DNA from: Mobula hypostoma
Lineage: Eukaryota
Direction: 5' to 3'
Assembly (NCBI RefSeq): GCF_963921235.1
Contig: NC_086104.1
Coordinates: 75,144,001 to 75,208,000 of the forward strand
Length of the DNA: 64,000 nt
Below are positions 24,724 through 58,364 of the stretch, one piece after another. The stretch's first letter is position 1. Every line of letters starts with the position of its first letter. The notes below the pieces were generated by a model. It searched no databases. It was given only the letters and a program-made list of their open reading frames with translations, and had not been told where the DNA came from. The position numbers and the translations under genes were made by a program.

Positions 24724-26033
24724 TCTCTCATTCTCTATCTCTGGAGACAGACTGTCCACTGACATCTACTACAAGCCCACTGACTCTCATAACTACCTCA
24801 ACTATACCTCTTCCCACCCCGCCACATGCAAAAATGCCATTCCCTATTCCCAGTTCCTCCGTCTCCACCGCATCTGCTCCGAGGATGAGATTTTCTGTTC
24901 CAGGACATCTCAAATGTTCTCTTTCTTTAAGGATCGTGGTTTCCCATCTGCTGTCATCAATGATGCCCTCACCCGCATCTCCTCCATTTCCCGCACTTCG
25001 GCTCTCACCCCATCTTCCCGCCACCACAACAGGGACAGTGTTCTCCTTGTCCTCACCCACCACCCCACTAGCCTCCGGATCCAGCACATTATCCTCAGCA
25101 ACTTCCGCCACCTTCAACAGGACCCCACCACTAAGCACATGTTTCCCTCTCCACCCCTCTCTGCTTTCCGCAGGGATCGGTCCCTCCGCGACTCCCTTAT
25201 CCACATGTCCCTCCCCATGGATCTCTCACCCGGCACTTATCCCTGTAAGCACAAGTCCTACACCTGTCCCTACACCTCCTCTCTTGCCACCATTCAGGGC
25301 CCCAAATAGTACTTCCAAGTAAGGCAACACTTCACTTGTGAGTCTATTGGGGTCATCTATTGCATCTGGTGCTCCCGGTGCGGCCTCCTCTACATTAGTG
25401 AAACCCGACGCAGATTGGGGGACCGCTTCGTCAAGCACCTCCACTCCGTCCGCCAAAACAGACAGGATCTCCCAGTAGCCTCTTCAACTCTGCTTCCCAC
25501 TCCGATTCGGATATGTCCATACATGGCCTCCTCTACTGCCATGATGAGGCTAAACTCAGGTTGGAGGAGCAATGCCTCATATACTGTCTAGGTAGTCTCC
25601 AGCCCCTTGGTATGAACATAGAATTCTCCAACTTCCGGTAACTCCCTCCCCCTCCCTTCCCCTATCCCTATTTCACTCTGCCCCCTCCCCCAGCTGCCTA
25701 TCACCTCCCTCATGGTTCCGCCTCCTTCTACTACCCATTGTGTTTTCCCCTATTCCTTCTTCACCTTTCCTGCCTATCACCGCCCTGCCTCCCCTCCCAC
25801 ACCCCTTTATCTTTCCCCTTACTGGTTTTTCACCTGGAACCTACCAGCCTTCTCCTTCCAACCCTCCTCCCACCTTCTTTATAGGGCCTCTGCCCCTTCC
25901 CCCTACAGTCCTGACGAAGGGTTCCGGCCCGAAACGTCAACCGATCTTTTCCACAGATGCTGCCCGACCTGCTGAATTCCTCCAGCGTGTTGTGAGTGTT
26001 GCTTTGACCCCAGCATCTGCAGATTATTTTGTG
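24724..26033 (+). mobile_element. Penelope-like element (Neptune type), 5'-truncated
   Basis: TDIYYKPTD...SSHP...IPYSQFLRLHRICS, followed by GIY-YIG coding remnants and a pyrimidine-rich 3' UTR with an HHR. 12-bp TSD tttatgtataga at 24712-24723 and 26034-26045. Confidence 0.92.
25907..25942 (+). ncRNA. Minimal type I hammerhead ribozyme motif with damaged stem I
   Basis: AGTC-CTGACGA-AGGG-TTCCGG-CCC-GAAA-CG-TC-AACC: the catalytic core is intact but the 3' strand of stem I is mismatched. Confidence 0.7.
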
Positions 26034-26216
26034 TTTATGTATAGACTGTTACTTATACATTGTATTTTATAAGATTGATTTAGTATTTATATTTGTTGTG
26101 TTTTTATTGTGTTCTTTACTATACTGTGTTTTTATGCTGCATCGGATCCTTAGTTTCAACCCAATCATTTCATTCTCCTTTACAATTGTGTACTGAAGAA
26201 TGACAATAAACAATCT

Positions 26217-37388: not shown

Positions 37389-38462
37389 AACATAGAACAT
37401 AGAATAGTACAGCACAGTAGAGGTCCTTCGGCCCACAATGTTGTGCCGACCCTCAAACCCTGCATCCCATATAAGCCCCCACCTTAATTTCCTCCATATA
37501 CCTGTCTAGTAGTCTCTTAAACTTCACTAGTGTATCTGCCTCCACCACTGACTCAGGCAGTGCATTCCAAGCACCAACCACTCTCTGAGTAAAAAACCTT
37601 CCTCTAATATCCCCCTTGAACTTCCCACCCCTTACCTTAAAGCCATGTCCTCTCGTATTGAGCAGTGGTGCCCTGGGGAAGAGGCGCTGGCTATCCACTC
37701 TATCTATTCCTCTTATTATCTTGTACACTTCTATCATGTCTCCTCTCATCCTCCTTCTCTCCAAAGAGTAAAGCCCTAGCTCCCTTAATCTCTGATCAAT
37801 ATGCATACTTTCTAAACCAGACAGCATCCTGGTAAATCTCCTCTGTACCCTTTCCAATGCTTCCACATCCTTCCTATAGTGAGGCGACCAGAACCGGACA
37901 CAGTACTCCAAGCGTGGCCTAACCAGAGTTTTATAAAGCTGCATCATTACCTCGCGACTCTTAAACTCTATCCCTCGACTTATGAAAGCTAACACCCCAT
38001 AAGCTTTCTTAACTACCCTATCTACCTGTGAGGCAACTTTCAGGGATCTGTAGACATGTACCTCCAGATCCCTCTGCCCCTCCACACTACCAAGTATCCT
38101 GCCATTTACTTTGTACTCTGCCTTGGAGTTTGTCCTTCCAAAGTGTACCATCTCACACTTGTCCGGGTTGAACTCCATCTGCCATTTCTCAGCCCACTTC
38201 TGCATCCTATCAATGTCTCTCTGCAATCTTCGACAATCCTCTACACTATCTGCAATACCACCAACCTTTGTGTCGTCTGAAAACTTGCCAACCCACCCTT
38301 CTACCCCCACATCCAGGTCGTTAACAAAAATCACAAGTAGAGGTTCCAGAACAGATCCTTATGGGACACCACTAGTCACAACCCTCCAATCCGAATGTAC
38401 TCCCTCCACCACGAGCCTCTGTCTTCTGCAGGCAAGCCAATTCTGAATCCCCCTGGCCAAAC
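37389..38462 (-). mobile_element. Young CR1 LINE, 5'-truncated
   Basis: Open 293-aa ORF KFSDDTK...EFNPDKC...LVRPRLEYC...RGHGFK...FFTQRVVGAWNALP; tail is the reverse complement of catagaacatagaa. Confidence 0.93.
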
Positions 38463-39244
38463 TTTTCTCAATCTTCCTCATCACAATGCTAATTCTCACT
38501 CCAAGCTCATTTCCCACTTGAGTGGAACAAATATCAAGGACTAATGTGAAACTATTCAATCTACACAGACAGCATTTAGGAATAAAAAAGGGAGGTCATT
38601 TTGATGCAGGCCCCCTTACAGTCAACAGGTAATAGAAGATACAAAGGTAGACTGTGAAAATATGTAAAAGCAACAGGGTAGTATCAGAAGGGGATTTTAT
38701 CTTTACTGGTATCAACTCAGATTACCTCAGAACATGGGATTTAGATGAGGAAGAATTCACAAAATGTATTCAAAAGTGTTTTCAGCAGCAGTATGTAGAG
38801 TCCTACTTGCCCTTACTTCAGGGTTGATATGTCTGTGGAAGAACCCTTTGGGACAGTGATCACAGTTCGGTAAGATAGTCATGGGTAAATGATCAAGTCC
38901 ATCCATGAGTTAGAGATTAGACACTAGTCAAGAAAGTTAAGGCATAAAGGATCAGAGGTGTTGGCAAACAGGATCCAAAATTGGCTGAGTGATCAGAGGC
39001 AGAGGGCAGTAGTGAATGGGTGTTTTTGAATGGAAATCTGTAATACACTCTATACCATAGGGAATCAGTACTGGGATCTGTGTTAATATATATTTTTCAT
39101 ATGAGAATGTATGAGGTATGATTCACAAGTTTACAGATGATGGAATAATTGAAGGAGTCCTAGATAGTGAAGAATAGGGACATAAATCAGCTAGAAAGTT
39201 GGGCAGAGCTGTTACAGGTAGAATCCAGATAAGTGTAACGTAAT

Positions 39245-39350
39245 CACAAACAACAGAAAATCTGCAGATGCTAGAAATCCAAGCAACACACACAAAATGC
39301 TGCAGGAACTCAGCAAGCCAGACAGCATCTTTGGAAAAGAGTGCAGTCGA
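39245..39350 (-). mobile_element. Solo PLE 3' tail fused to the HMGB2 retrocopy
   Basis: acaaacaacagaaaatctgcagatgct...aagcaacacacacaaaatgctgcaggaactcagc...gtgcagtcga is the reverse complement of the PLE tail at 46488-46592. Confidence 0.9.
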
Positions 39351-39396
39351 TAGTCTATTGTCGCCTCGTGTAGTGTGAGCCTAATACAAACCAATC

Positions 39397-39981
39397 ATGG
39401 TTAGAAAAGATCCAAATAAGTCTCAGGGCAAAATGTCCTTGTATGCCTATTTTATGCAGACTTGTCGTGAGGAACACAAGAAGAAACATCCGGAAGCCAG
39501 TGTGAACTTTGCAGAGTTTTCAAAGAAATGTTCTGAAAGATGGAAGATCATGTCAAGCAAAAAGAAGGCAAAGTTTGAAGACCTGGTCAAGAATGACAGG
39601 GCCCGTTATGATTGGGAGATGAAGAACTATGTTCCTCAAGAGGGGGACAAGAAGAAGAAGAAGGATCCAAGTGCTCCCAAGAGACCACTGTCAGCATTTT
39701 TCATTTTCTGCTCTGACAAACGTCCAAAGGTAAAGAGTGAATCCCCTGGAATGTCCATTGGTGACATTGCAAAGAAACTGGGAGAGATGTGGTCCACAGT
39801 GCAAACCAAGGATAAGCAAACATACCAGCAAAAGGCATCCAAATTAAAGGAGAAGAATGAAAAGGAAATTGCAGCATATCGTGCCAAACGCAAGAATGAT
39901 GCTAGGAAGAAACCTGCTGCCAAACCAGCTCAGGCTGCGAAGGAGGAGGAGGAGGAGGAACAGGAGGAGGACAATGAAGAA

Positions 39982-40013
<32 letters not shown>

Positions 40014-40044
40014 GGAAGAAGATGATGATGAGGATGATGATTAA
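39397..40044 (+). pseudogene. HMGB2: Processed HMGB2-like retrocopy with an open 215-aa ORF; ~46-nt 5' UTR from 39351 and partial 3' UTR to ~40238
   Basis: Two HMG boxes ([27 protein letters not shown]; APKRP.SAFF.FC...KKLGEMW) and an acidic tail, with no introns. DPNK and YVP..GDKK are HMGB2-like. 3' UTR motifs aatgtgaattca and aaactgtaca..tgtatag resemble the HMGB2 UTR as I recall it. Confidence 0.88.
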
Positions 40045-42184
40045 ATAGCAACAGATGTAAAAAAGTTCTTTGTCTAAGCTTGATCTATTTTTCTTTGCGA
40101 GGACAGGAAATGTGAATTCATTTGTATCTTGGATCAATTGCTTAGGTGTAAAGAAACTGTACAAAACTGTGTATAGTTAGTGTTGTATTTTTGCACTGTG
40201 TAGCCAGGCCCTGTATTGTTTTAGTTGTAAGTAGCTGATTTTTTGGGAGGTCAGATTCTGATACACAGTATAGAGGGCATACAGAGTAAATAGCAGGACC
40301 TTAGGAGCCCTGATATACAGTATCATCTTGAGGTACAAATCCATTGATCTCTGAATGTGTGACACAGGTAGACAGAGTAGTGGAAAAGCCATTTGGTGTG
40401 CTGCTGTTAGAGGCCATTATGTTGACTTTAAAGACTAGGACACATTTTGCAGTTGTGTAAAACATTAGGTAACCATAGATACTACAGCACAGAAACAGGC
40501 CTTTTGGCCCTTCTTGGCTGTGCCGAACCATTTTCTGCCTAGTCCCACTGACCTGCACACGGACCATATCCCTCCATACACCCTCCATCCATGTATCTGT
40601 CCAATTTATTCTTAAACGTTAAAAAAGAACCCGCATTTACCACCTCGTCTGGCAGCTCATTCCGTACTCCCACCACCCTCTGTGTGAAGAAGCCCCCCCC
40701 CAATGTTCCCTTTAAACTTTTCCCCCCTCACCCTTAACCCATGTCCTCTGGTTTTTTTCTCCCCTTGCCTCAGTGGAAAAGGCCTGCTTGCATTCACTCT
40801 ATCTATACCCATCATAATTTTATATACCTCTAATCAAATTTCCCCTCATTCTTCTACGCTCCAGGGAATAAAGTCCTAACCTATTCAACCTTTCTCTGTA
40901 ACTGAGTTTCTCAAGTCCCGGCAACATCCTTGTAAACCTTCTCTGCACTCTTTCAACTTTATTTATATCCTTCCTGTAATTTGGTGACCAAAACTGAACA
41001 CAATACTCCAGATTCGGCCTCACCAATGCCTTATACAACCTCATCATAACATTCCAGCTCTTATACTCAATACTTTGATTAATAAAGGCCAATGTACCAA
41101 AAGCTCTCTTTACGACCCTATCTACCTGTGACGCTACTATTAGGGAATTTTGTATCTGTATTCCCAGATCCCTCTGTTCCACTGCACTCCTCAGTGCCTT
41201 ACCATTAACCCTGTAGGTTCTACCTTGGTTTGTCCTTCCAACGTGCAATACCTCACACTTGTCAGTATTAAACTCCATCTGCCATTTTTCAGCCCATTTT
41301 TCCAGCTGGTCCAAGTCCCTCTGCAGGCTCTGAAAACCTTCCTCACTGTCTACTACAGCTCCAATCTTTGTATCATCAGCAAATTTGCTGATCCAGTTTA
41401 CCACATTATCATCCAGATCATTGATATAGATGACAAATAACAATGGACCCAGCACTGATTCCTGTGGCACACCACTAGTCACAGGCCTCCACTCGGAGAA
41501 GCAATTCTCTACTACCACTCTTTGGCTTCTTCCATTGAGCCAATGTCTAATCCAATTTACCACCTCTGCATGTATACCTAGCGACTGAATTTTCCTAACT
41601 AACCTCCCATGCGGGACCTTGTCAAAGGCCTTACTGAAGTCCACGTAGACAATATCCACTGCCTTCCCTACATCCACTTTCCTGGTAACCTCCTCGAAAA
41701 ACTCCAACAGATTGGTCAAGCATGACCTACCACACACAAAGCCATGTTGATTCTCCCTAATAAGTCCCTGTCTATCCAAATGCTTGTAGATTCTGTCTCT
41801 TAGTACTCCCTCCAATAACTTACCTACTGCCGACGTTAAATTTACCAGCCTATAATTTCCCGGATTACTTTTCGATCCTTTTTTAAACAACGGAACAACA
41901 TGAGCCACTCTCCAATACTCCGGCACCTCACCTGTAGACAGTGACATTTTAAATATTTCTGCCAGGGCCCCTGCAATCTCAACACTGGTCTCCTTCAAGG
42001 TCCGAGGGAACACCCTGTCAGGTCCCGAGGATTTATCCACTTTAATTTTCCTCAAGACAGCAAGGACCTCCTCCTTTTCGATCTGTACAGTTTCCATGAT
42101 CTCACTACTTGTTTCCCTTAATTCCATAGACTTCATGCCAGTTTCCTTAGTAAATACAGACGCAAAAAACCTATTTAAGATCTC

Positions 42185-44988
42185 AAGCAACACACATCAA
42201 AGTTGCTGGTGAACGCAGCAGGCCAGGCAGCATCTGTAGGAAGAGGTGCAGTCGACGTTTCAGGCCGAGACCCTTCGTCAGGACTAACTGAAGGAAGAGT
42301 GAGTAAGGGATTTGAAAGTTGGAGGGGGAGGGGGAGATCCAAAATGATAGGAGAAGACAGGAGGGGGAGGGATAGAGCCAAGAGCTGGACAGGTGATAGG
42401 CAAAAGGGGATACGAGAGGATCATGGGACAGGAGGTCTGGGAAGAAAGACAAGAGGGTGGGGGGACCCAGAGGATGGGCAAGAGGTATATTCAGAGGGAC
42501 AGAGGGAAAAAACGGATAGTGAGAGAAAGAATGTGTGCATAAAAATAAGTAACAGATGGGGTATGAGGGGGAGGTGGGGCCTTAGCGGAAGTTAGAGAAG
42601 TCAATGTTCATGCCATCAGGTTGGAGGCTACCCAGACGGAATATAAGGTGTTGTTCCTCCAACCTGAGTGTGGCTCCATCTTTACAGTAGTGGAGGCCGT
42701 GGACAGACATGTCAGAATGGGAATGGGATGTGGAATTAAAATGTGTGGCCACTGGGAGATCCTGCTTTCTCTGGTGGACAGAGCGTAGATGTTCAGCAAA
42801 GCGGTCTCCCAGTCTGCGTCGGGTCTCGCCAATATATAAAAGGCCACATCGGGAGCACCGGACGCAGTATATCACCCCAGTCGACTCACAGGTGAAGTGT
42901 TGCCTCACCTGGAAGGACTGTTTGGGGCCCTGAATGGTGGTAAGGGAGGAAGTGTAAGGGCATGTGTAGCATTTGTTCCGCTTACACGGATAAGTGCCAG
43001 GAGGGAGATCAGTGGGGAGGGATGGGGGGGACGAATGGACAAGGGAGTTGCGTAAGGAGCGATCCCTGCAGAATGCAGAGAGAGGGGGGAGGGAAAGATG
43101 TGCTTAGTGGTGGGATCCCGTTGGAGGTGGTGGAAGTTACGGAGAATAATATGTTGGACCCAGAGGCTGGTGTGGTGGTAGGTGAGGACCAGGGGAACCC
43201 TGTTCCTAGTGGGGTGGTGGGAGGATGGAGTGAGAGCAGATGTCCATGAAATGGGGGAGATGCGTTTAAGAGCAGAGTTGATAGTGGAGGAAGGGAAGCC
43301 CCTTTCTTTAAAAAAGGAAGACATCTCCCTCATCCTGGAATGAAAAGCCTCATCCTGAGAGCAGATGCGGTGGAGACGGAGGAATTGCGAGAAGGGGATG
43401 GCGTTTTTGCAAGAGACAGGGTGAGAAGAGGAATAGTCCAGATAGCTGTGAGAGTCAGTAGGCTTATAGTAGACATCAGTGGATAAGCTGTCTCCAGAGA
43501 CAGAGACAGAAAGATCTAGAAAGGGGACAGAGGTGTCGGAAATGGACCAGGTAAACTTGAGGGCAGGGTGAAAGTTGGAGGCAAAGTTAGTAAAGTCAAC
43601 GAGTTCTGCATGCGTGCAGGAAGCAGCGCCAATGCAGTCGTCGATGTAGCGAAGGAAAAGTGGGGGACAGATACCAGAATAGCCACGGAACATAGATTGT
43701 TCCACAAACCCAACAAAAAGGTAGGCATAGCTCGGACCCATACGGGTGCCCATAGCTACACCTTTAGTTTGGAGGAAGTGGGAGGAGCCAAAGGAGAAAT
43801 TATTAAGAGTAAGGACTAATTCCGCTAGAGGGAGCAGAGTGGTGGTAGAGGGGAACTGATTAGGTCTGGAATCCAAAAAGAAGCAGAGAGCTTTGAGACC
43901 TTCCTGATGGGGGATGGAAGTAGATAAGGACTGGACATCCATGGTGAAAATAAAGCGGTGGGGGCCAGGGAACTTAAAATCATCGAAAAGTTTAAGAGCG
44001 TGAGAAGTGTCACGAACATAGGTCGGAAGTGATTGAACAAGGGGTGATAAAACCATGTCGAGGTATGCAGAAACGAGTTCGGTGGGGCAGGAGCAAGCTG
44101 AGACAATAGGTCGGCCAGGACAGGCAGGTTTGTGGATCTTGGGTAGGAGGTAGAAACGGGAAGTGCGGGGTGTGGGAACTATAAGGTTGGTAGCAGTGGA
44201 TGGGAGATCCCCTGAGCGGATAAAGTCGGTGATGGTGTGGGAGACAATGGCCTGGTGCTCCTTAGTGGGGTCACGATCGAGGGGTAAATAAGAGGAGGTA
44301 TCCGCGAGTTGTCGCTGTGCCTCGGCAACGTAGAGGTCAGTACGCCAGACTACAACAGCACCCCCCTTATCGACGGGTTTAATAATGTTAGGATTAGTGC
44401 GGAGGGAGTGGAGAGCAGAGCGTTCCGAAGGAGTGAGGTTGGAATGGGGACAAGGTACGGTGAAGTCGAGACGGTTGATATTCCGTCGGCAATTAGCGAT
44501 AAAGAGATCCAGAGCAGGCAGAAGGCCAGAGCGGGGTGTCCATGAAGAAGAGGAGGCTTGAAGACGGGAGAAGGGGTCATCGGTGGGGGTGGAAGAGTCC
44601 TTGCCGAAGAAGTAGGCTCGGAGATGGAGACGGCGGAAGAAAAGTTCCGCATCATGGCGAACACGGAACTCGCTGAGGTGTGGGCGAAGGGGGACAAAGG
44701 TGAGGCCCTTACTGAGGACAGAGCGTTCTGCCTCCGACAGTTGAAGGTCGGAGGGGATGGTAAAGACCCGGCACAGATGAGAGCTGGGATCAGAGGGGGG
44801 AGGGGGGAGGCTGGGGGTGTCAATGGAGAGGGGAGGGTTGGGGTGAGAGGAAGATGGAGCCTCTGAGGGCCCAGGAGTTGACGGTGGGATCTGAGGAAGA
44901 CGGGGCTGCGGAGTGGTGGTGGGGGAAGGGGAGACGGGAGTCACAACAGCAGCACATAAAGACCCGGCCTGGAGCTCAAGGCACCCAT
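42185..44988 (-). mobile_element. Neptune-type PLE, long arm: RT plus GIY-YIG endonuclease (frameshifted)
   Basis: ORF 42905-44944: LLPKIHK, RPIVS, FTMDVQSL, QTKGVAMGTRMGP, RYIDD. ORF 42582-42908: VIYCVRCSRCGLLYIGET...EH...HF...E. The Cys-rich RT-EN linker is typical of Neptune. Confidence 0.95.
42250..42285 (-). ncRNA. Intact minimal type I hammerhead ribozyme motif
   Basis: Minus strand reads AGTC-CTGACGA-AGG-GTCTCGG-CCT-GAAA-CG-TC-GACT. Confidence 0.85.
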
Positions 44989-46592
44989 GCTATGGGCACC
45001 CGTATGGGTCCTAGCTATGCCTGCCTTTTTGTTGGGTTTGTGGAACAATCTATGTTCCGTGCCTATTCTGGTATCTGTCCCCCGCTTTTCCTTCACTACA
45101 TCGACGACTGCATTGGCGCTGCTTCCTGCACGCATGCAGAACTCGTTGACTTTACTAACTTTGCCTCCAAATTTCACCCTGACCTCAAGTTTACCTGGTC
45201 CATTTCCGACACCTCCCTCCCCTTTCTGGATCTTTCTATCTCTGTCTCTGGAGACAGCTTATCCACTGATGTCTACTATAAGCCTTCTGACTCTCACAGC
45301 TATCTGGACTATTCCTCTTCTCACCCTGTCTCTTGCAAAAACGCCATCCCCTTCTCGCAATTCCTCCGTCTCCACCGCATCTGCTCTCAGGATGAGGCTT
45401 TTCATTCTAGAATGAGGGAGATGTCTTCCTTTTTTAAAGAAAGGGGCTTCCCTTCCTCCACTATCAACTCTGCTCTTAAACGCATCTCCTCCATTTCACG
45501 TACATCTGCTCTCACTCCATCCTCCCACCACCCCACTAGGAACAGGGTTCCCCTGGTCCTCACCTACCACCCCACCAGCCTCCGGGTCCAACATATTATT
45601 CTCCGTAACTCCCGCCACCTCCAACGGGATCCCATCACTAAGCACATCTTTCCCTCCCCCCCCCTCTGCATTCCGCAGGGATCACTCCCTACACAACTCC
45701 CTTGTCCATTCGTCCCCCCCATCCCTCCCCACTGATCTCCCTCCTGGCACTTATCCGTGTAAGCGGAACAAGTGCTATACATGCCCTTACACTTCCTCCC
45801 TTACCACCATTCAGGGCCCCAAACAGTCCTTCCAGGTGAGGCAACACTTTACCTGTGAGTCGACTGGGGTGATATACTGCGTCCGGTGCTCCCGATGTGG
45901 CCTTTTATATATTGGCGAGACCTGACGCAGACTGGGAGATCGCTTTGCTGAACATCTACGCTCTGTCCACCAGAGAAAGCAGGATCTCCCAGTGGCCACA
46001 CATTTTCATTCCACATCCCATTCCCATTCTGACATGTCTATCCACGGCCTCCTCTACTGTAAAGATGAAGCCACACTCAGGTTGGAGGAACAACACCTTA
46101 TATTCCGTCTGGGTAGCCTCCAACCTGATGGCATGAACATCGACTTCTCCAACTTCCGCTAAGGTCCCACCTCCCCCTCGTACCCCATCTGTTACTTATT
46201 TTTATGCACACATTCTTTCTCTCACTCTCCTTTTTCTCCCTCTGTTCCTCTGAATATACCTCTTGCCCATCCTCTGGGTCCCCCCCCCCCCTTGTCTTTC
46301 TTCCCGGACCTCCTGTCCCATGATCCTCTCATATCCCCTTTGCCAATCACCTGTCCAGCTCTTGGCTCCATCCCTCCCCCTCCTGTCTTCTCCTATCATT
46401 TTGCATCTCCCCCTCCCCCTCCAGCTTTCAAATCCCTTACTCACTCTTCCTTCAGTTAGTCCTGACGAAGGGTCTCGGCCTGAAACGTCGACTGCACCTC
46501 CTCCTACAGATGCTGCCTTGCCTGCTGCGTTCACCAGCAACTTTGATGTGTGTTGCTTGAATTTCCAGCATCTGCAGAATTCCTGTTGTTTG
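44989..46592 (+). mobile_element. Neptune-type PLE, short inverted arm
   Basis: Inverted copy of 43757-42185 starting at gctatgggcacccg (AMGTRMG), with ~34 extra terminal nt. The whole 42185-46592 insert is flanked by the 13-bp TSD tatttaagatctc (42172-42184, 46593-46605). Confidence 0.95.
46458..46493 (+). ncRNA. Intact minimal type I hammerhead ribozyme motif; predicted cleavage between 46489 and 46490
   Basis: Stem I AGTC/GACT, core CTGACGA, stem II AGG/CCT, GAAA, palindromic ACGT in place of stem III, and a GTC cleavage triplet. Confidence 0.85.
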
Positions 46593-47329
46593 TATTTAAG
46601 ATCTCCCCCATTTCCTTTGGTTCCGCACATAGCTGACCACTCTGAACTTCAAGAGGACCAATTTTATCCCTTACAATCCTTTTGCTCTTAATATACCTGT
46701 AAAAGCTCTTTGGATTATCCTTCACTTTGACTGCCAAGGCAACCTCATGTCTTCTTTTAGCCCTCCTGATTTCTTTCTTAAGTATTTTCTTGCACTTCTT
46801 ATACTCCTCAAGCACCTTATTTACTCCCTGCTTCCTAGACCACACTTGGCATATGGTGTATAGTTTAGTGGTTGCCACGCTACAGTAAAGGTGTGGTAGC
46901 AATAGACAGTGCAGAAGAGATTGACCAGTACATTGCCTGGACCGGGCAGCTTTGGTTTTTGGAAGAGATTGGATGAAGTGAAGTGGGTTTATTCTCACTG
47001 GAGTGTTGGAGACTGAGGTATAATCTTATGGAGGTTTATAAAATTACGAGGAAAATAATATACAGTACTGTGCAAATATGATCATTACAGAATGTCCCTC
47101 TGGTGCTTCCCACTCCCTTCCTTCTTCCTTCTCCTTTTCCCAACCATGATTCCCCCCTCCCTGTACCTTTTCTCTCTCAGTCCATAGTAGAGACCCCATA
47201 TCGCAATCAGGTTTATCATCACTCACATATGTCATGAAATTTGTTTTTTTTTGCAGCAGTACAATCCAATACATAGAATTACCACAGTTCTATGCAAAAG
47301 CCTCAGGCACCCAAGCTCTATATCAATGG

Positions 47330-58240: not shown

Positions 58241-58364
58241 AAACAACAGGAATTCTGCAGATGCTGGAAATTCAAGCAACATACATCAAAGTTGCTGGTG
58301 AACGCAGCAGGCCAAGCAGCATCTCTAGGAACAGGTGCAGTCGACGTTTCAGGCCGAGACCCTT
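58241..58364 (-). mobile_element. Solo PLE tail of the same young subfamily as 42185-46592, truncated inside HHR stem II; an older tail follows at ~58440-58510
   Basis: aaacaacaggaattctgcagatgctggaaattcaagcaac...gtgcagtcgacgtttcaggccgagaccctt. Confidence 0.9.

What the first reader, a model, noticed from the sequence alone, without database searches (positions are those of the whole stretch)
39245..40245. HMGB2 retrocopy fused to a Penelope tail at the hammerhead cleavage site: candidate PLE-driven capture of a host mRNA
Seen: an old CR1 is interrupted at one point by a ~1-kb insert with two parts joined with no spacer. The first is a complete ~105-nt PLE 3' tail on the minus strand. The second is an intronless HMGB2 cDNA on the plus strand (5' UTR, full ORF, ~200 nt of 3' UTR) with no poly(A) and no clean TSD. 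On the minus strand the PLE part begins TC|GACTGCAC, and the intact HHR at 46458-46493 is predicted to cut GTC|GACTGCAC, so the PLE sequence stops within 2 nt of the predicted RNA 5' end. Established: PLEs carry minimal HHRs and make inverted insertions, whereas L1-made retrocopies normally have poly(A) and a TSD (both L1 copies here do). Inference: PLE RT primed at one target strand copied the tail to the cleaved RNA end, while the other target strand primed internally on HMGB2 mRNA, and the two cDNAs were joined. This is the same geometry as the inverted PLE at 42185-46592, with a host mRNA replacing the second arm. It would be a poly(A)-independent route to retrogenes.
Basis: partly seen in the sequence, partly recalled or inferred. 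Interest (0 to 1): 0.9.

Follow-up and report, generated by a model that had tools for sequence, protein, structure and literature searches.

The report
Ray HMGB2 retrocopy joined to Penelope tail
A decaying, intron-free copy of the devil-ray HMGB2 gene sits head-to-head against a 104-base Penelope retrotransposon tail at one break in an old LINE, which looks like one unusual insertion event, but it is a single case and the enzyme responsible is inferred, not shown.

Summary
Window 39247-39350 (-) is a Penelope-like element (PLE) 3' tail. It abuts, with no spacer, a spliced HMGB2 cDNA at 39351-40244 (+). The pair interrupts one CR1-type RT reading frame at a single point, with no target-site duplication or deletion (within about 2 nt).

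The cDNA lacks all four parental introns. It also lacks at least 34 nt of 5' UTR and at least 540 nt of 3' UTR, and it has no poly(A). It ends in a T-run that shares 3-4 nt with the target.

The PLE part keeps its normal 3' terminus. It stops 2 nt upstream of the predicted hammerhead cut, close but not exact.

The tail is not part of the parental 5' UTR in four other elasmobranchs. A relative with about 98% identical flanks carries all three junctions. A more distant one carries at least the left junction.

The ORF is intact but evolves like a pseudogene.

Best reading (about 0.5): one compound event in which both ends of a break primed reverse transcription, one on a PLE tail and the other on HMGB2 mRNA by microhomology. 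This is the PLE counterpart of L1 twin-priming chimeras. Published in vitro work shows a PLE protein extending both strands.

It remains one locus, it lacks the family's usual 13-bp duplication, and break repair using another RT is not excluded. No earlier scan note on this genome (by title) reports another PLE-host mRNA chimera.

The parts
38960..39246 (+). Left part of an old CR1/L2-type LINE RT reading frame (the target). It ends ...PDKCNV(I), nucleotides ...GTAACGTAATCA.
   Evidence: Reading. tblastn to the LINE ORF at 40820-42193. Nucleotide alignment with four related copies.
39247..39350 (-). PLE 3' tail, 104 nt. On the minus strand it runs from TC|GACTGCAC (2 nt upstream of the predicted hammerhead cut) to the normal 3' terminus CTGTTGTTTG. 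It belongs to an older subfamily than the neighbouring 4.4-kb PLE.
39351..39396 (+). HMGB2 5' UTR fragment. It holds the last 33 nt of parental exon 1 spliced to the first 13 nt of exon 2. At least 34 nt of upstream 5' UTR seen in other elasmobranch mRNAs are missing.
39397..40044 (+). Intact 215-aa HMGB2-like ORF with two HMG boxes and an acidic tail. Introns 2-4 are absent. NCBI annotates it as HMGB2-like isoform X6 of Mobula hypostoma. Its substitution pattern is that of a pseudogene.
40045..40244 (+). First ~200 nt of the HMGB2 3' UTR, ending GCTGATTTTTT. Parental mRNAs continue for at least 540 nt more. There is no poly(A). The last 3-6 T residues could equally belong to the target.
   Evidence: record 12, which runs on for 640 nt unlike the window.
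40241..40455 (+). Right part of the same CR1/L2-type RT reading frame. It resumes (T)TTTGGGAGGTCAGAT, coding (H)FGRSD.
46455..46489 (+). Reference minimal hammerhead of the neighbouring PLE. It has helix I AGTC/GACT, core CTGACGA ... GAAA, a 1-bp helix III with a palindromic ACGT, and a predicted cut after 46489.
   Evidence: Motif description in PMC4209133. No Rfam match.
42184..46593 (.). Head-to-head inverted PLE used as the geometric comparison. The minus-strand arm is 42184-44988 and the plus-strand arm is 44989-46593, with 3' ends pointing outward. The arms are 96-97% complementary. A TSD of about 11-13 bp flanks it. The left arm lacks the last 38 nt of the tail.

Best explanation
The ~1-kb insert was made in one event at one break in an old CR1-type LINE. 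Two first-strand cDNAs were primed from the two DNA ends and joined head to head.

The plus-strand 3' end (...GTAATCA) primed on the normal initiation site at the 3' end of a Penelope-like element RNA. The cDNA ran about 104 nt, to within 2 nt of the 5' end that hammerhead self-cleavage would create.

The minus-strand 3' end (...CCCAAAA) annealed by 3-4 nt to an internal U-run in the 3' UTR of HMGB2 mRNA. It primed a cDNA that ran through the spliced coding region and stopped 33 nt into exon 1. The two cDNA 3' ends were then joined without microhomology.

The enzyme was most likely the PLE reverse transcriptase/endonuclease. It is known to leave head-to-head inverted copies, and in vitro it extends both strands.

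The product is a poly(A)-less, TSD-less HMGB2 retrocopy. Its ORF happens to be still open, but it is decaying neutrally.

Shown: the anatomy, the junctions, intron loss, both truncations, the intact target, presence in relatives, and relaxed constraint.

Inferred: that it was a single event, which strand primed on what, which RT acted, and the role of hammerhead cleavage.
For: - The PLE tail keeps its exact 3' terminus at the target junction and stops at TC|GACTGCAC.
- The HMGB2 part aligns to parental mRNAs exactly over 39351-40244. All four introns are missing and both UTRs are truncated.
- The right junction overlaps the parental GCTGATTTTTTT and the target (C)ATTTTGGG by 3-4 T.
- The target frame is continuous once the insert is removed, so both parts entered at the same nucleotide. 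Neither has its own TSD.
- Parental 5' UTRs read GCTTTG|TAGTC where the window reads GTCGA|TAGTC. The tail is therefore not parental sequence.
- The junction is present in contigs of the species and of a relative with about 98% identical flanks. That relative also spans both outer junctions.
- The same window holds a PLE with the same head-to-head geometry.
- Frangieh et al. 2024 report that a purified PLE protein cleaves and extends both top and bottom strands, unlike R2 and L1.
- Craig et al. 2021 describe adjacent inverted 5'-truncated copies as typical of PLE insertions.
- Opposite orientation rules out RNA ligation or a simple RNA-to-RNA template switch. Antisense of a spliced mRNA can only be cDNA (inference).
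Against: - This is one locus. My look-ups over 3279 scan notes on this genome returned no title describing a second PLE-mRNA chimera.
- There is no TSD, whereas the neighbouring PLE of this kind has one of about 13 bp. The break may therefore not have been made by the PLE endonuclease.
- The PLE end is 2 nt upstream of the cut site, not at it.
- In vitro HHR cleavage was not needed for PLE insertion, and no RNA-seq reads ended at the cut site in Anolis.
- Of five tails in this window, only this one ends near the cut.
- No experiment shows that a PLE RT can use a non-PLE RNA.
- For the more distant relative, only the left junction was visible, so 'PLE tail alone' there is not excluded.
Confidence: 0.5

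Rival explanations
1. Break repair with borrowed cDNA. A spontaneous double-strand break in the CR1 was patched by endonuclease-independent, microhomology-primed reverse transcription or by capture of free cDNA fragments. The RT came from any active element (LINE, LTR or PLE). The PLE tail and the HMGB2 cDNA are two passengers of one repair event, and the PLE machinery did not 'capture' the mRNA.
For: The locus has no TSD, no poly(A), a 3'-truncated mRNA copy, a 3-4 nt microhomology at the right junction and a blunt join in the middle. These are the hallmarks known for endonuclease-independent L1 insertions (my own knowledge of Morrish et al. 2002, not read here). Unchecked scan notes suggest that this genome also holds LTR- and LINE-linked mRNA chimeras, so other RT sources were active.
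Against: The PLE part begins exactly at the element's normal RT initiation terminus, as in bona fide PLE insertions. That points to the PLE's own RNP at that end. There is no target deletion, which is common in such repair events. The head-to-head geometry is the PLE signature.
Confidence: 0.27
2. Two independent insertions. A short PLE tail and an atypical HMGB2 retrocopy landed one after the other at the same nucleotide of the CR1.
For: Both parts predate the split from the closest relative, so their order cannot be resolved. For the more distant relative only the CR1/PLE junction was seen. The region is a nest of transposon insertions.
Against: It needs two separate TSD-less events with a zero-nucleotide gap and no loss of target sequence. 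A normal PLE mini-insertion of this kind would carry a TSD of about 13 bp. A normal L1-made retrocopy would carry poly(A) and a TSD.
Confidence: 0.13
3. Retrocopy of a chimeric transcript. An RNA that began in an antisense PLE tail and was spliced or read through into HMGB2 was reverse transcribed as one molecule.
For: NCBI models this locus with several isoforms. The RNA contig of the species diverges from the window upstream of 39384, so alternative 5' exons exist or intron 1 is retained.
Against: Four elasmobranch HMGB2a 5' UTRs continue GCTTTG upstream of TAGTC with no PLE sequence. The contig of the distant relative that matches exon 1 stops aligning at 39351. The 5' end of the supposed transcript would have to coincide exactly with the PLE 3' terminus. 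The 3' end would still be an unexplained internal priming.
Confidence: 0.05

Closest known systems
L1 twin-priming chimeras with antisense-oriented cellular RNAs (Ostertag and Kazazian 2001 model; catalogue in Cell Genomics 2026, PMC13174262)
   Same: Two reverse transcriptions start from the two ends of one target break and are joined. This gives a retroelement 3' end and a second RNA copy in opposite orientations. The second RNA is primed internally by microhomology.
   Different: Here the element is a Penelope-like element, not L1. There is no poly(A) and no TSD. The element arm is only 104 nt and ends next to a ribozyme cut site. In the cited catalogue the antisense mRNA chimeras did not include a first exon, whereas this copy does.
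Canonical head-to-head inverted PLE insertions (Craig et al. 2021, PMC8557442; Frangieh et al. 2024, PMC11167929); example in this window at 42184-46593
   Same: A PLE 3' end lies at the outer boundary, and a second arm in the opposite orientation meets it head to head. In vitro the PLE protein nicks and extends both strands.
   Different: The second arm is a host mRNA copy instead of a PLE copy. It was primed at an internal U-run rather than at the PLE initiation site. There is no TSD, whereas the neighbouring PLE has one of about 13 bp.
LTR-mediated retroposition (Tan et al. 2016, PMC5131818)
   Same: Retrocopies form without poly(A), chimeric with retroelement sequence, with short similarities at the fusion points.
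   Different: Those retrocopies lie inside LTR elements, in the same orientation as a rule, and arise by template switching inside the particle. Here there is no LTR element, the orientation is opposite, and the join to the element has no microhomology.
Endonuclease-independent L1 insertion at DNA breaks (Morrish et al. 2002; recalled, not read here)
   Same: No TSD, 3'-truncated copies without poly(A), and microhomology at the junction.
   Different: No target deletion is seen. One arm starts at the exact PLE initiation terminus.
Ordinary L1-type processed pseudogenes of HMGB genes
   Same: A spliced, intronless copy of an abundant HMGB mRNA that decays neutrally.
   Different: It lacks poly(A) and a TSD, is truncated inside the 3' UTR, and is fused to an inverted PLE tail.

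Membership tests
Processed (RNA-derived) retrocopy | All parental introns are absent at positions where the parental gene has them. | tested here: met
   The Pristis HMGB2a gene has introns at window-equivalent positions 39383/4, 39546/7, 39689/90 and 39864/5. The window is continuous across all four.
Processed (RNA-derived) retrocopy | A separate intron-bearing or expressed parental gene exists in the same species. | tested here: met
   RNA contigs of the same species align at about 94-95% with 13 and 10 differences. One of them continues upstream with sequence unlike the window (records 20 and 21).
L1-type processed pseudogene | A 3' poly(A) tail at the end of the full 3' UTR. | tested here: not met
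   The copy ends inside the 3' UTR, at least 540 nt before the end of parental mRNA contigs, with no A-run.
L1-type processed pseudogene | A target-site duplication flanks the insert. | tested here: not met
   The left flank ends GTAATCA and the right resumes (T)TTTGGGAGG. Related LINE copies show the target is continuous within about 2 nt.
Penelope-like element (reference copy 42184-46593) | A single ORF with an RT followed by a GIY-YIG endonuclease. | tested here: inconclusive
   Motifs can be read in the ORFs: RYIDDCIG and KPxxPGRPIVS in the 679-aa ORF, and GVIYCV...LYIGET in the next ORF. Pfam gave no family at E<=0.01.
Penelope-like element | A minimal hammerhead motif lies in the terminal repeat just upstream of the 3' tail. 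| tested here: met
   CTGACGA-helix II-GAAACGTC|GACT, with a 4-bp helix I and a palindromic ACGT, is present in three or four copies. This matches the min-HHR description in PMC4209133.
Penelope-like element | Inverted head-to-head copies occur, with an optional 30-40 nt tail at one end only. | tested here: met
   The arms are 96-97% complementary. The left arm ends 38 nt before the right arm's terminus. This is as described.
Hammerhead ribozyme (Rfam families) | A match to a curated covariance model. | tested here: not met
   There was no hit at gathering threshold in the window. There was no hammerhead hit at E<=10 in 46380-46620. That is expected for 1-bp helix III minimal forms, and cleavage activity cannot be tested here.
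Hammerhead-defined 5' end | The element copy begins exactly at the nucleotide 3' of the cut (G of GACTGCAC). | tested here: not met
   Homology extends 2 nt further (TC). These two bases could be templated or untemplated additions that match by chance (1 in 16).
Twin-priming chimera | Two arms lie in opposite orientation, each with its priming end at the outer target junction. | tested here: met
   The PLE 3' terminus is at 39247. The HMGB2 3' side is at 40244, with T/A microhomology to the target.
Twin-priming chimera | A TSD from staggered nicks. | tested here: not met
   No duplication is present.
Functional retrogene | Purifying selection on the ORF. | tested here: not met
   The window branch has 22 non-synonymous and 12 synonymous changes (dN/dS 0.45), against 0.08-0.09 in the parental lineages (Fisher p 0.001). 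Against the species' own parental RNA, codons 1-90 show 9 non-synonymous and 4 synonymous differences. All 9 are replacements in the window copy at otherwise invariant residues.

The most novel reading that the evidence does not exclude
Penelope-like element RNPs, which nick and extend both target strands, occasionally let the second strand prime on a bystander host mRNA through a few bases of terminal complementarity. This would give PLE-rich genomes (cartilaginous and bony fishes, amphibians, reptiles, many invertebrates) a PLE-driven, poly(A)-independent route to retrocopies. Such copies would be marked by an inverted PLE tail that ends at the hammerhead cut site.
Probability: 0.35. Interest if true: 0.7.

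Novelty: new variant of a known kind. Interest (0 to 1): 0.5.

Why it matters
Which retroelements make retrocopies outside mammals is still largely open. L1 and LTR elements are the documented sources. Three full-text searches of the held library found no report linking Penelope-like elements to host mRNA retroposition.

If this locus reflects PLE activity, it gives natural, in vivo support to the recent in vitro finding that PLE proteins extend both strands. It would also give a concrete signature for genome-wide searches: an inverted PLE tail ending at the ribozyme site next to a spliced, poly(A)-less cDNA.

As it stands it is a well-documented single case. The retrocopy itself is an ordinary decaying pseudogene, although NCBI annotates it as a multi-isoform HMGB2-like gene.

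Tried and rejected
- **Rfam.** A search of the whole window at gathering threshold and of the HHR region at E<=10 found no hammerhead family. The motif had to be read by eye against the published min-HHR description.
- **Pfam.** A search of the PLE ORFs returned nothing. Identity rests on motifs read.
- **The Mobula parental HMGB2 protein or gene.** It was not among the protein search hits or cluster members. The exact look-up of the annotated isoform found no contig. The parental structure therefore comes from Pristis and three unnamed elasmobranch RNA contigs, plus the partial RNA contigs of the species.
- **Read laying (one call allowed).** The repeats swamped the tables, and only a few records per run were shown. 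The presence of the HMGB2 part in the more distant relative, and the nature of a second junction-bearing sequence in the source species, could not be settled. Missing contigs mean nothing there, because conserved sequence is filtered out.
- **RNA-ligation model (RtcB joining the 5'-OH ribozyme product to another RNA).** Rejected, because the two parts are in opposite orientation and antisense of a spliced mRNA cannot be an RNA.
- **AGTC microhomology.** Annealing of the two cDNA ends through the shared AGTC was rejected as the joining step, because both copies of AGTC are kept in the product.
- **Assembly artefact.** Rejected, because independent contigs span the junction.
- **Census within the window.** Only five tails are present, too few for any statistic on 5' ends.
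Full report
**What is there**

On the plus strand the region reads as four consecutive blocks. The first is an old CR1/L2-type LINE reading frame, up to 39246. The second is the reverse complement of a Penelope-like element (PLE) 3' tail, 39247-39350. The third is a sense HMGB2 cDNA, 39351-40244. The fourth is the same LINE frame resuming, from about 40241.

The tail aligns at 82% to the tail of the full PLE at 46488-46593. It aligns to three other tails in the window. On its own strand it starts TCGACTGCAC and ends at the usual terminus CTGTTGTTTG.

In the intact copies the sequence just upstream is a minimal hammerhead. It has helix I AGTC/GACT, core CTGACGA, a short helix II, and GAAACGTC with a palindromic ACGT. 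This fits the min-HHR of PLEs described by Cervera and de la Pena (PMC4209133). Its predicted cut is GTC|GACTGCAC. The PLE part of the insert therefore stops 2 nt upstream of that cut: near it, not on it.

Rfam does not recognise these minimal forms.

**The HMGB2 part**

The ORF 39397-40044 encodes 215 aa with two HMG boxes. It is 86% identical to Pristis pectinata HMGB2a.

The best database hit is XP_062911164.1, 'HMGB2-like isoform X6' of Mobula hypostoma. It matches the window ORF residue for residue except for a modelled splice in the acidic tail. The window is therefore from that devil ray or a very close relative.

Against the Pristis HMGB2a gene, the window aligns in five blocks that correspond to five exons. 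The window is continuous across all four intron positions, which fall after 39383, 39546, 39689 and 39864.

Three elasmobranch HMGB2a mRNA contigs each align from exactly 39351 to exactly 40244. Upstream of the start they carry up to 34 more nucleotides of 5' UTR, ending GCTTTG|TAGTC, as does the Pristis gene. The window has GTCGA|TAGTC. There is thus no microhomology at the PLE/HMGB2 join, and the PLE tail is not parental 5' UTR.

Downstream, the mRNAs continue GCTGATTTTTTTAAGGCAC for at least 540 nt more. The window turns into GCTGATTTTTTGGGAGG. The copy is therefore spliced, truncated at both ends, and without poly(A).

**The target**

A younger LINE in the window (ORF 40820-42193, minus strand) served as a guide. 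With the insert removed, one tblastn match runs through the break in one frame, from ...WAELLQVE... to ...HFGRSD...VTQVDRVVEKPFGVL (E 1.8e-5).

Nucleotide alignment with four related copies gives GT..T.CAC(T/G)TTGGAAGG across the site. The left flank ends GTAAT-CA and the right resumes (T)TTTGGGAGG.

The target is intact to within about 2 nt. Nothing is duplicated and nothing is lost. Three or four of the six T residues at 40239-40244 can be assigned either to the target or to the mRNA. That is the footprint expected if the minus-strand end ...CCCAAAA-3' annealed to the U-run and primed reverse transcription (inference).

**Relatives and reads (the single laying allowed)**

- Contigs of the source species span the PLE/HMGB2 junction exactly (record 4, 39328-39534, no differences).
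- A related species has flanks about 98% identical. It has contigs across the left junction (38694-39267), the middle junction (39286-39465) and the right junction (40194-40498). The whole insert therefore predates that split.
- A more distant species, with flanks about 96% identical, has a contig across the left junction (38461-39284). It also has a separate contig that matches 40048-40244 and then runs on for 640 nt unlike the window, which is the parental 3' UTR. Whether its locus also holds the HMGB2 part could not be seen. The tool filters conserved sequence, so absence means nothing.
- RNA contigs of the source species match the copy at about 94-95%. One departs from the window upstream of 39384, the exon 1/2 border. 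These are the parental transcripts, and nothing shows that the retrocopy itself is expressed.

**State of the gene**

On the window branch there are 22 non-synonymous and 12 synonymous changes in codons 1-181. That gives dN/dS 0.45, against 0.08-0.09 on the two parental lineages (Fisher p 0.001).

Against the species' own parental RNA, codons 1-90 differ at 9 non-synonymous and 4 synonymous sites (one search read). All nine replacements are in the window copy, at residues invariant in nine elasmobranch sequences. Many are CpG transitions.

It is a pseudogene whose frame is still open by chance. The multi-isoform gene model is probably an annotation artefact.

**Mechanism**

The two parts are in opposite orientation. 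Each has its priming end facing the target. The antisense strand of a spliced mRNA can only be cDNA. RNA ligation and a simple RNA-to-RNA template jump are therefore excluded (inference).

What fits is two first-strand syntheses from the two ends of one break, joined head to head. This is the twin-priming geometry proposed for L1 inversions. It has recently been proposed for antisense-oriented tRNA, 5S and mRNA chimeras with L1 (PMC13174262).

For PLEs the same geometry is the norm. Inverted 5'-truncated copies adjacent to the main copy are typical (PMC8557442). The window itself holds one: arms 42184-44988 and 44989-46593, 96-97% complementary, with a TSD of about 11-13 bp and one arm lacking the last 38 nt of tail. 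A purified anole PLE protein cleaves and extends both strands in vitro, unlike R2 and L1 (PMC11167929).

Its own quick refutation tests did not refute it.

**What weakens it**

- There is no TSD, so the break may not be the PLE endonuclease's usual staggered cut. A spontaneous break patched by microhomology-primed reverse transcription from any RT source gives the same picture.
- The PLE end is 2 nt off the cut. The in vitro study found HHR cleavage unnecessary for insertion, and it found no RNA-seq ends at the cut site. In this window only one of five tails ends there.
- Other first-stage notes on this genome report PLE mini-insertions and hairpins that start or fold back at the cut site. These are unchecked leads, not evidence.
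- It is one locus. My look-ups among the scan's notes on this genome returned no title describing another PLE-host mRNA chimera.
- Poly(A)-independent retrocopy formation is already known for LTR elements (PMC5131818).

**Verdict**

A single compound insertion is the most economical reading; I put 'one event' at about 0.8 in total across the first two explanations. PLE-driven two-ended priming is the leading but unproven version, at about 0.5.

It is a new variant of a known kind, a twin-priming type chimera with a PLE in place of L1. Its interest is moderate until a genome-wide census shows whether it recurs.

Noticed in passing
window 39328-39487 (reads of the source species, record 5; related species record 30): A second sequence in reads of the source species carries the same PLE/HMGB2 junction but differs at 11 of 160 positions. 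It keeps the parental base at 39361, 39367, 39383, 39425 and 39454 and resembles the related species' copy. It could be an allele or a duplicated locus; this is unresolved. The read set also differs from the window by about 1% in the flank, so it is not the assembled haplotype.
   Followed up: partly
window 39351-39363 versus 46454-46466: The parental HMGB2 5' UTR at the junction (TAGTCCATTGACG) resembles the 5' half of the PLE hammerhead (TAGTCCTGACGA). Its UAGUC could pair with the first bases (GACUG) of a cleaved PLE tail, as helix I does. No joining model I tried uses this, and it may be chance (roughly 1 in a few hundred for 5-6 nt at a fixed place).
   Followed up: partly
window 39397-40044: NCBI annotates this retrocopy as 'HMGB2-like isoform X6' with an intron modelled inside the acidic-tail repeat. 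The substitution pattern says it is a pseudogene, and no RNA contig identical to it was seen.
   Followed up: partly
window 42184-42222 versus 46556-46593: In the 4.4-kb inverted PLE, the left arm ends 38 nt short of the right arm's terminus. This matches the two RT initiation sites and the optional 30-40 nt 'tail' reported for PLEs. The flanking direct repeat TATTTAAGATC(+) is visible on both sides.
   Followed up: partly
window 58241-58364 (-): Another PLE tail, 95% identical to the young family. It is 5'-truncated inside helix II of the hammerhead, 22 nt upstream of the cut. It abuts a different repeat (...ttattgttgtcacatgtaccaaggtac...).
   Followed up: no
window 25907-26039 (+): An older PLE copy whose hammerhead has GGCCCGAAAC, giving a G10.1-C11.1 pair. 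The young family has GGCCTGAAAC, a G-U wobble at that pair. The tail in the chimera belongs to the older type.
   Followed up: no
window 40460-42193 (-): A younger CR1/L2-type LINE with a 457-aa open RT frame. Its 3' part lies 200 nt from the insert, and the PLE at 42184 is inserted into or abuts its 5' side. Its copy number in reads is very high (depth about 10^5-10^6 summed).
   Followed up: no
window 42582-44944 (-): Pfam hmmscan finds no RT or GIY-YIG family in a PLE ORF that visibly carries RYIDDC and GIY...YIG motifs. Automated annotation will therefore miss this element type.
   Followed up: no
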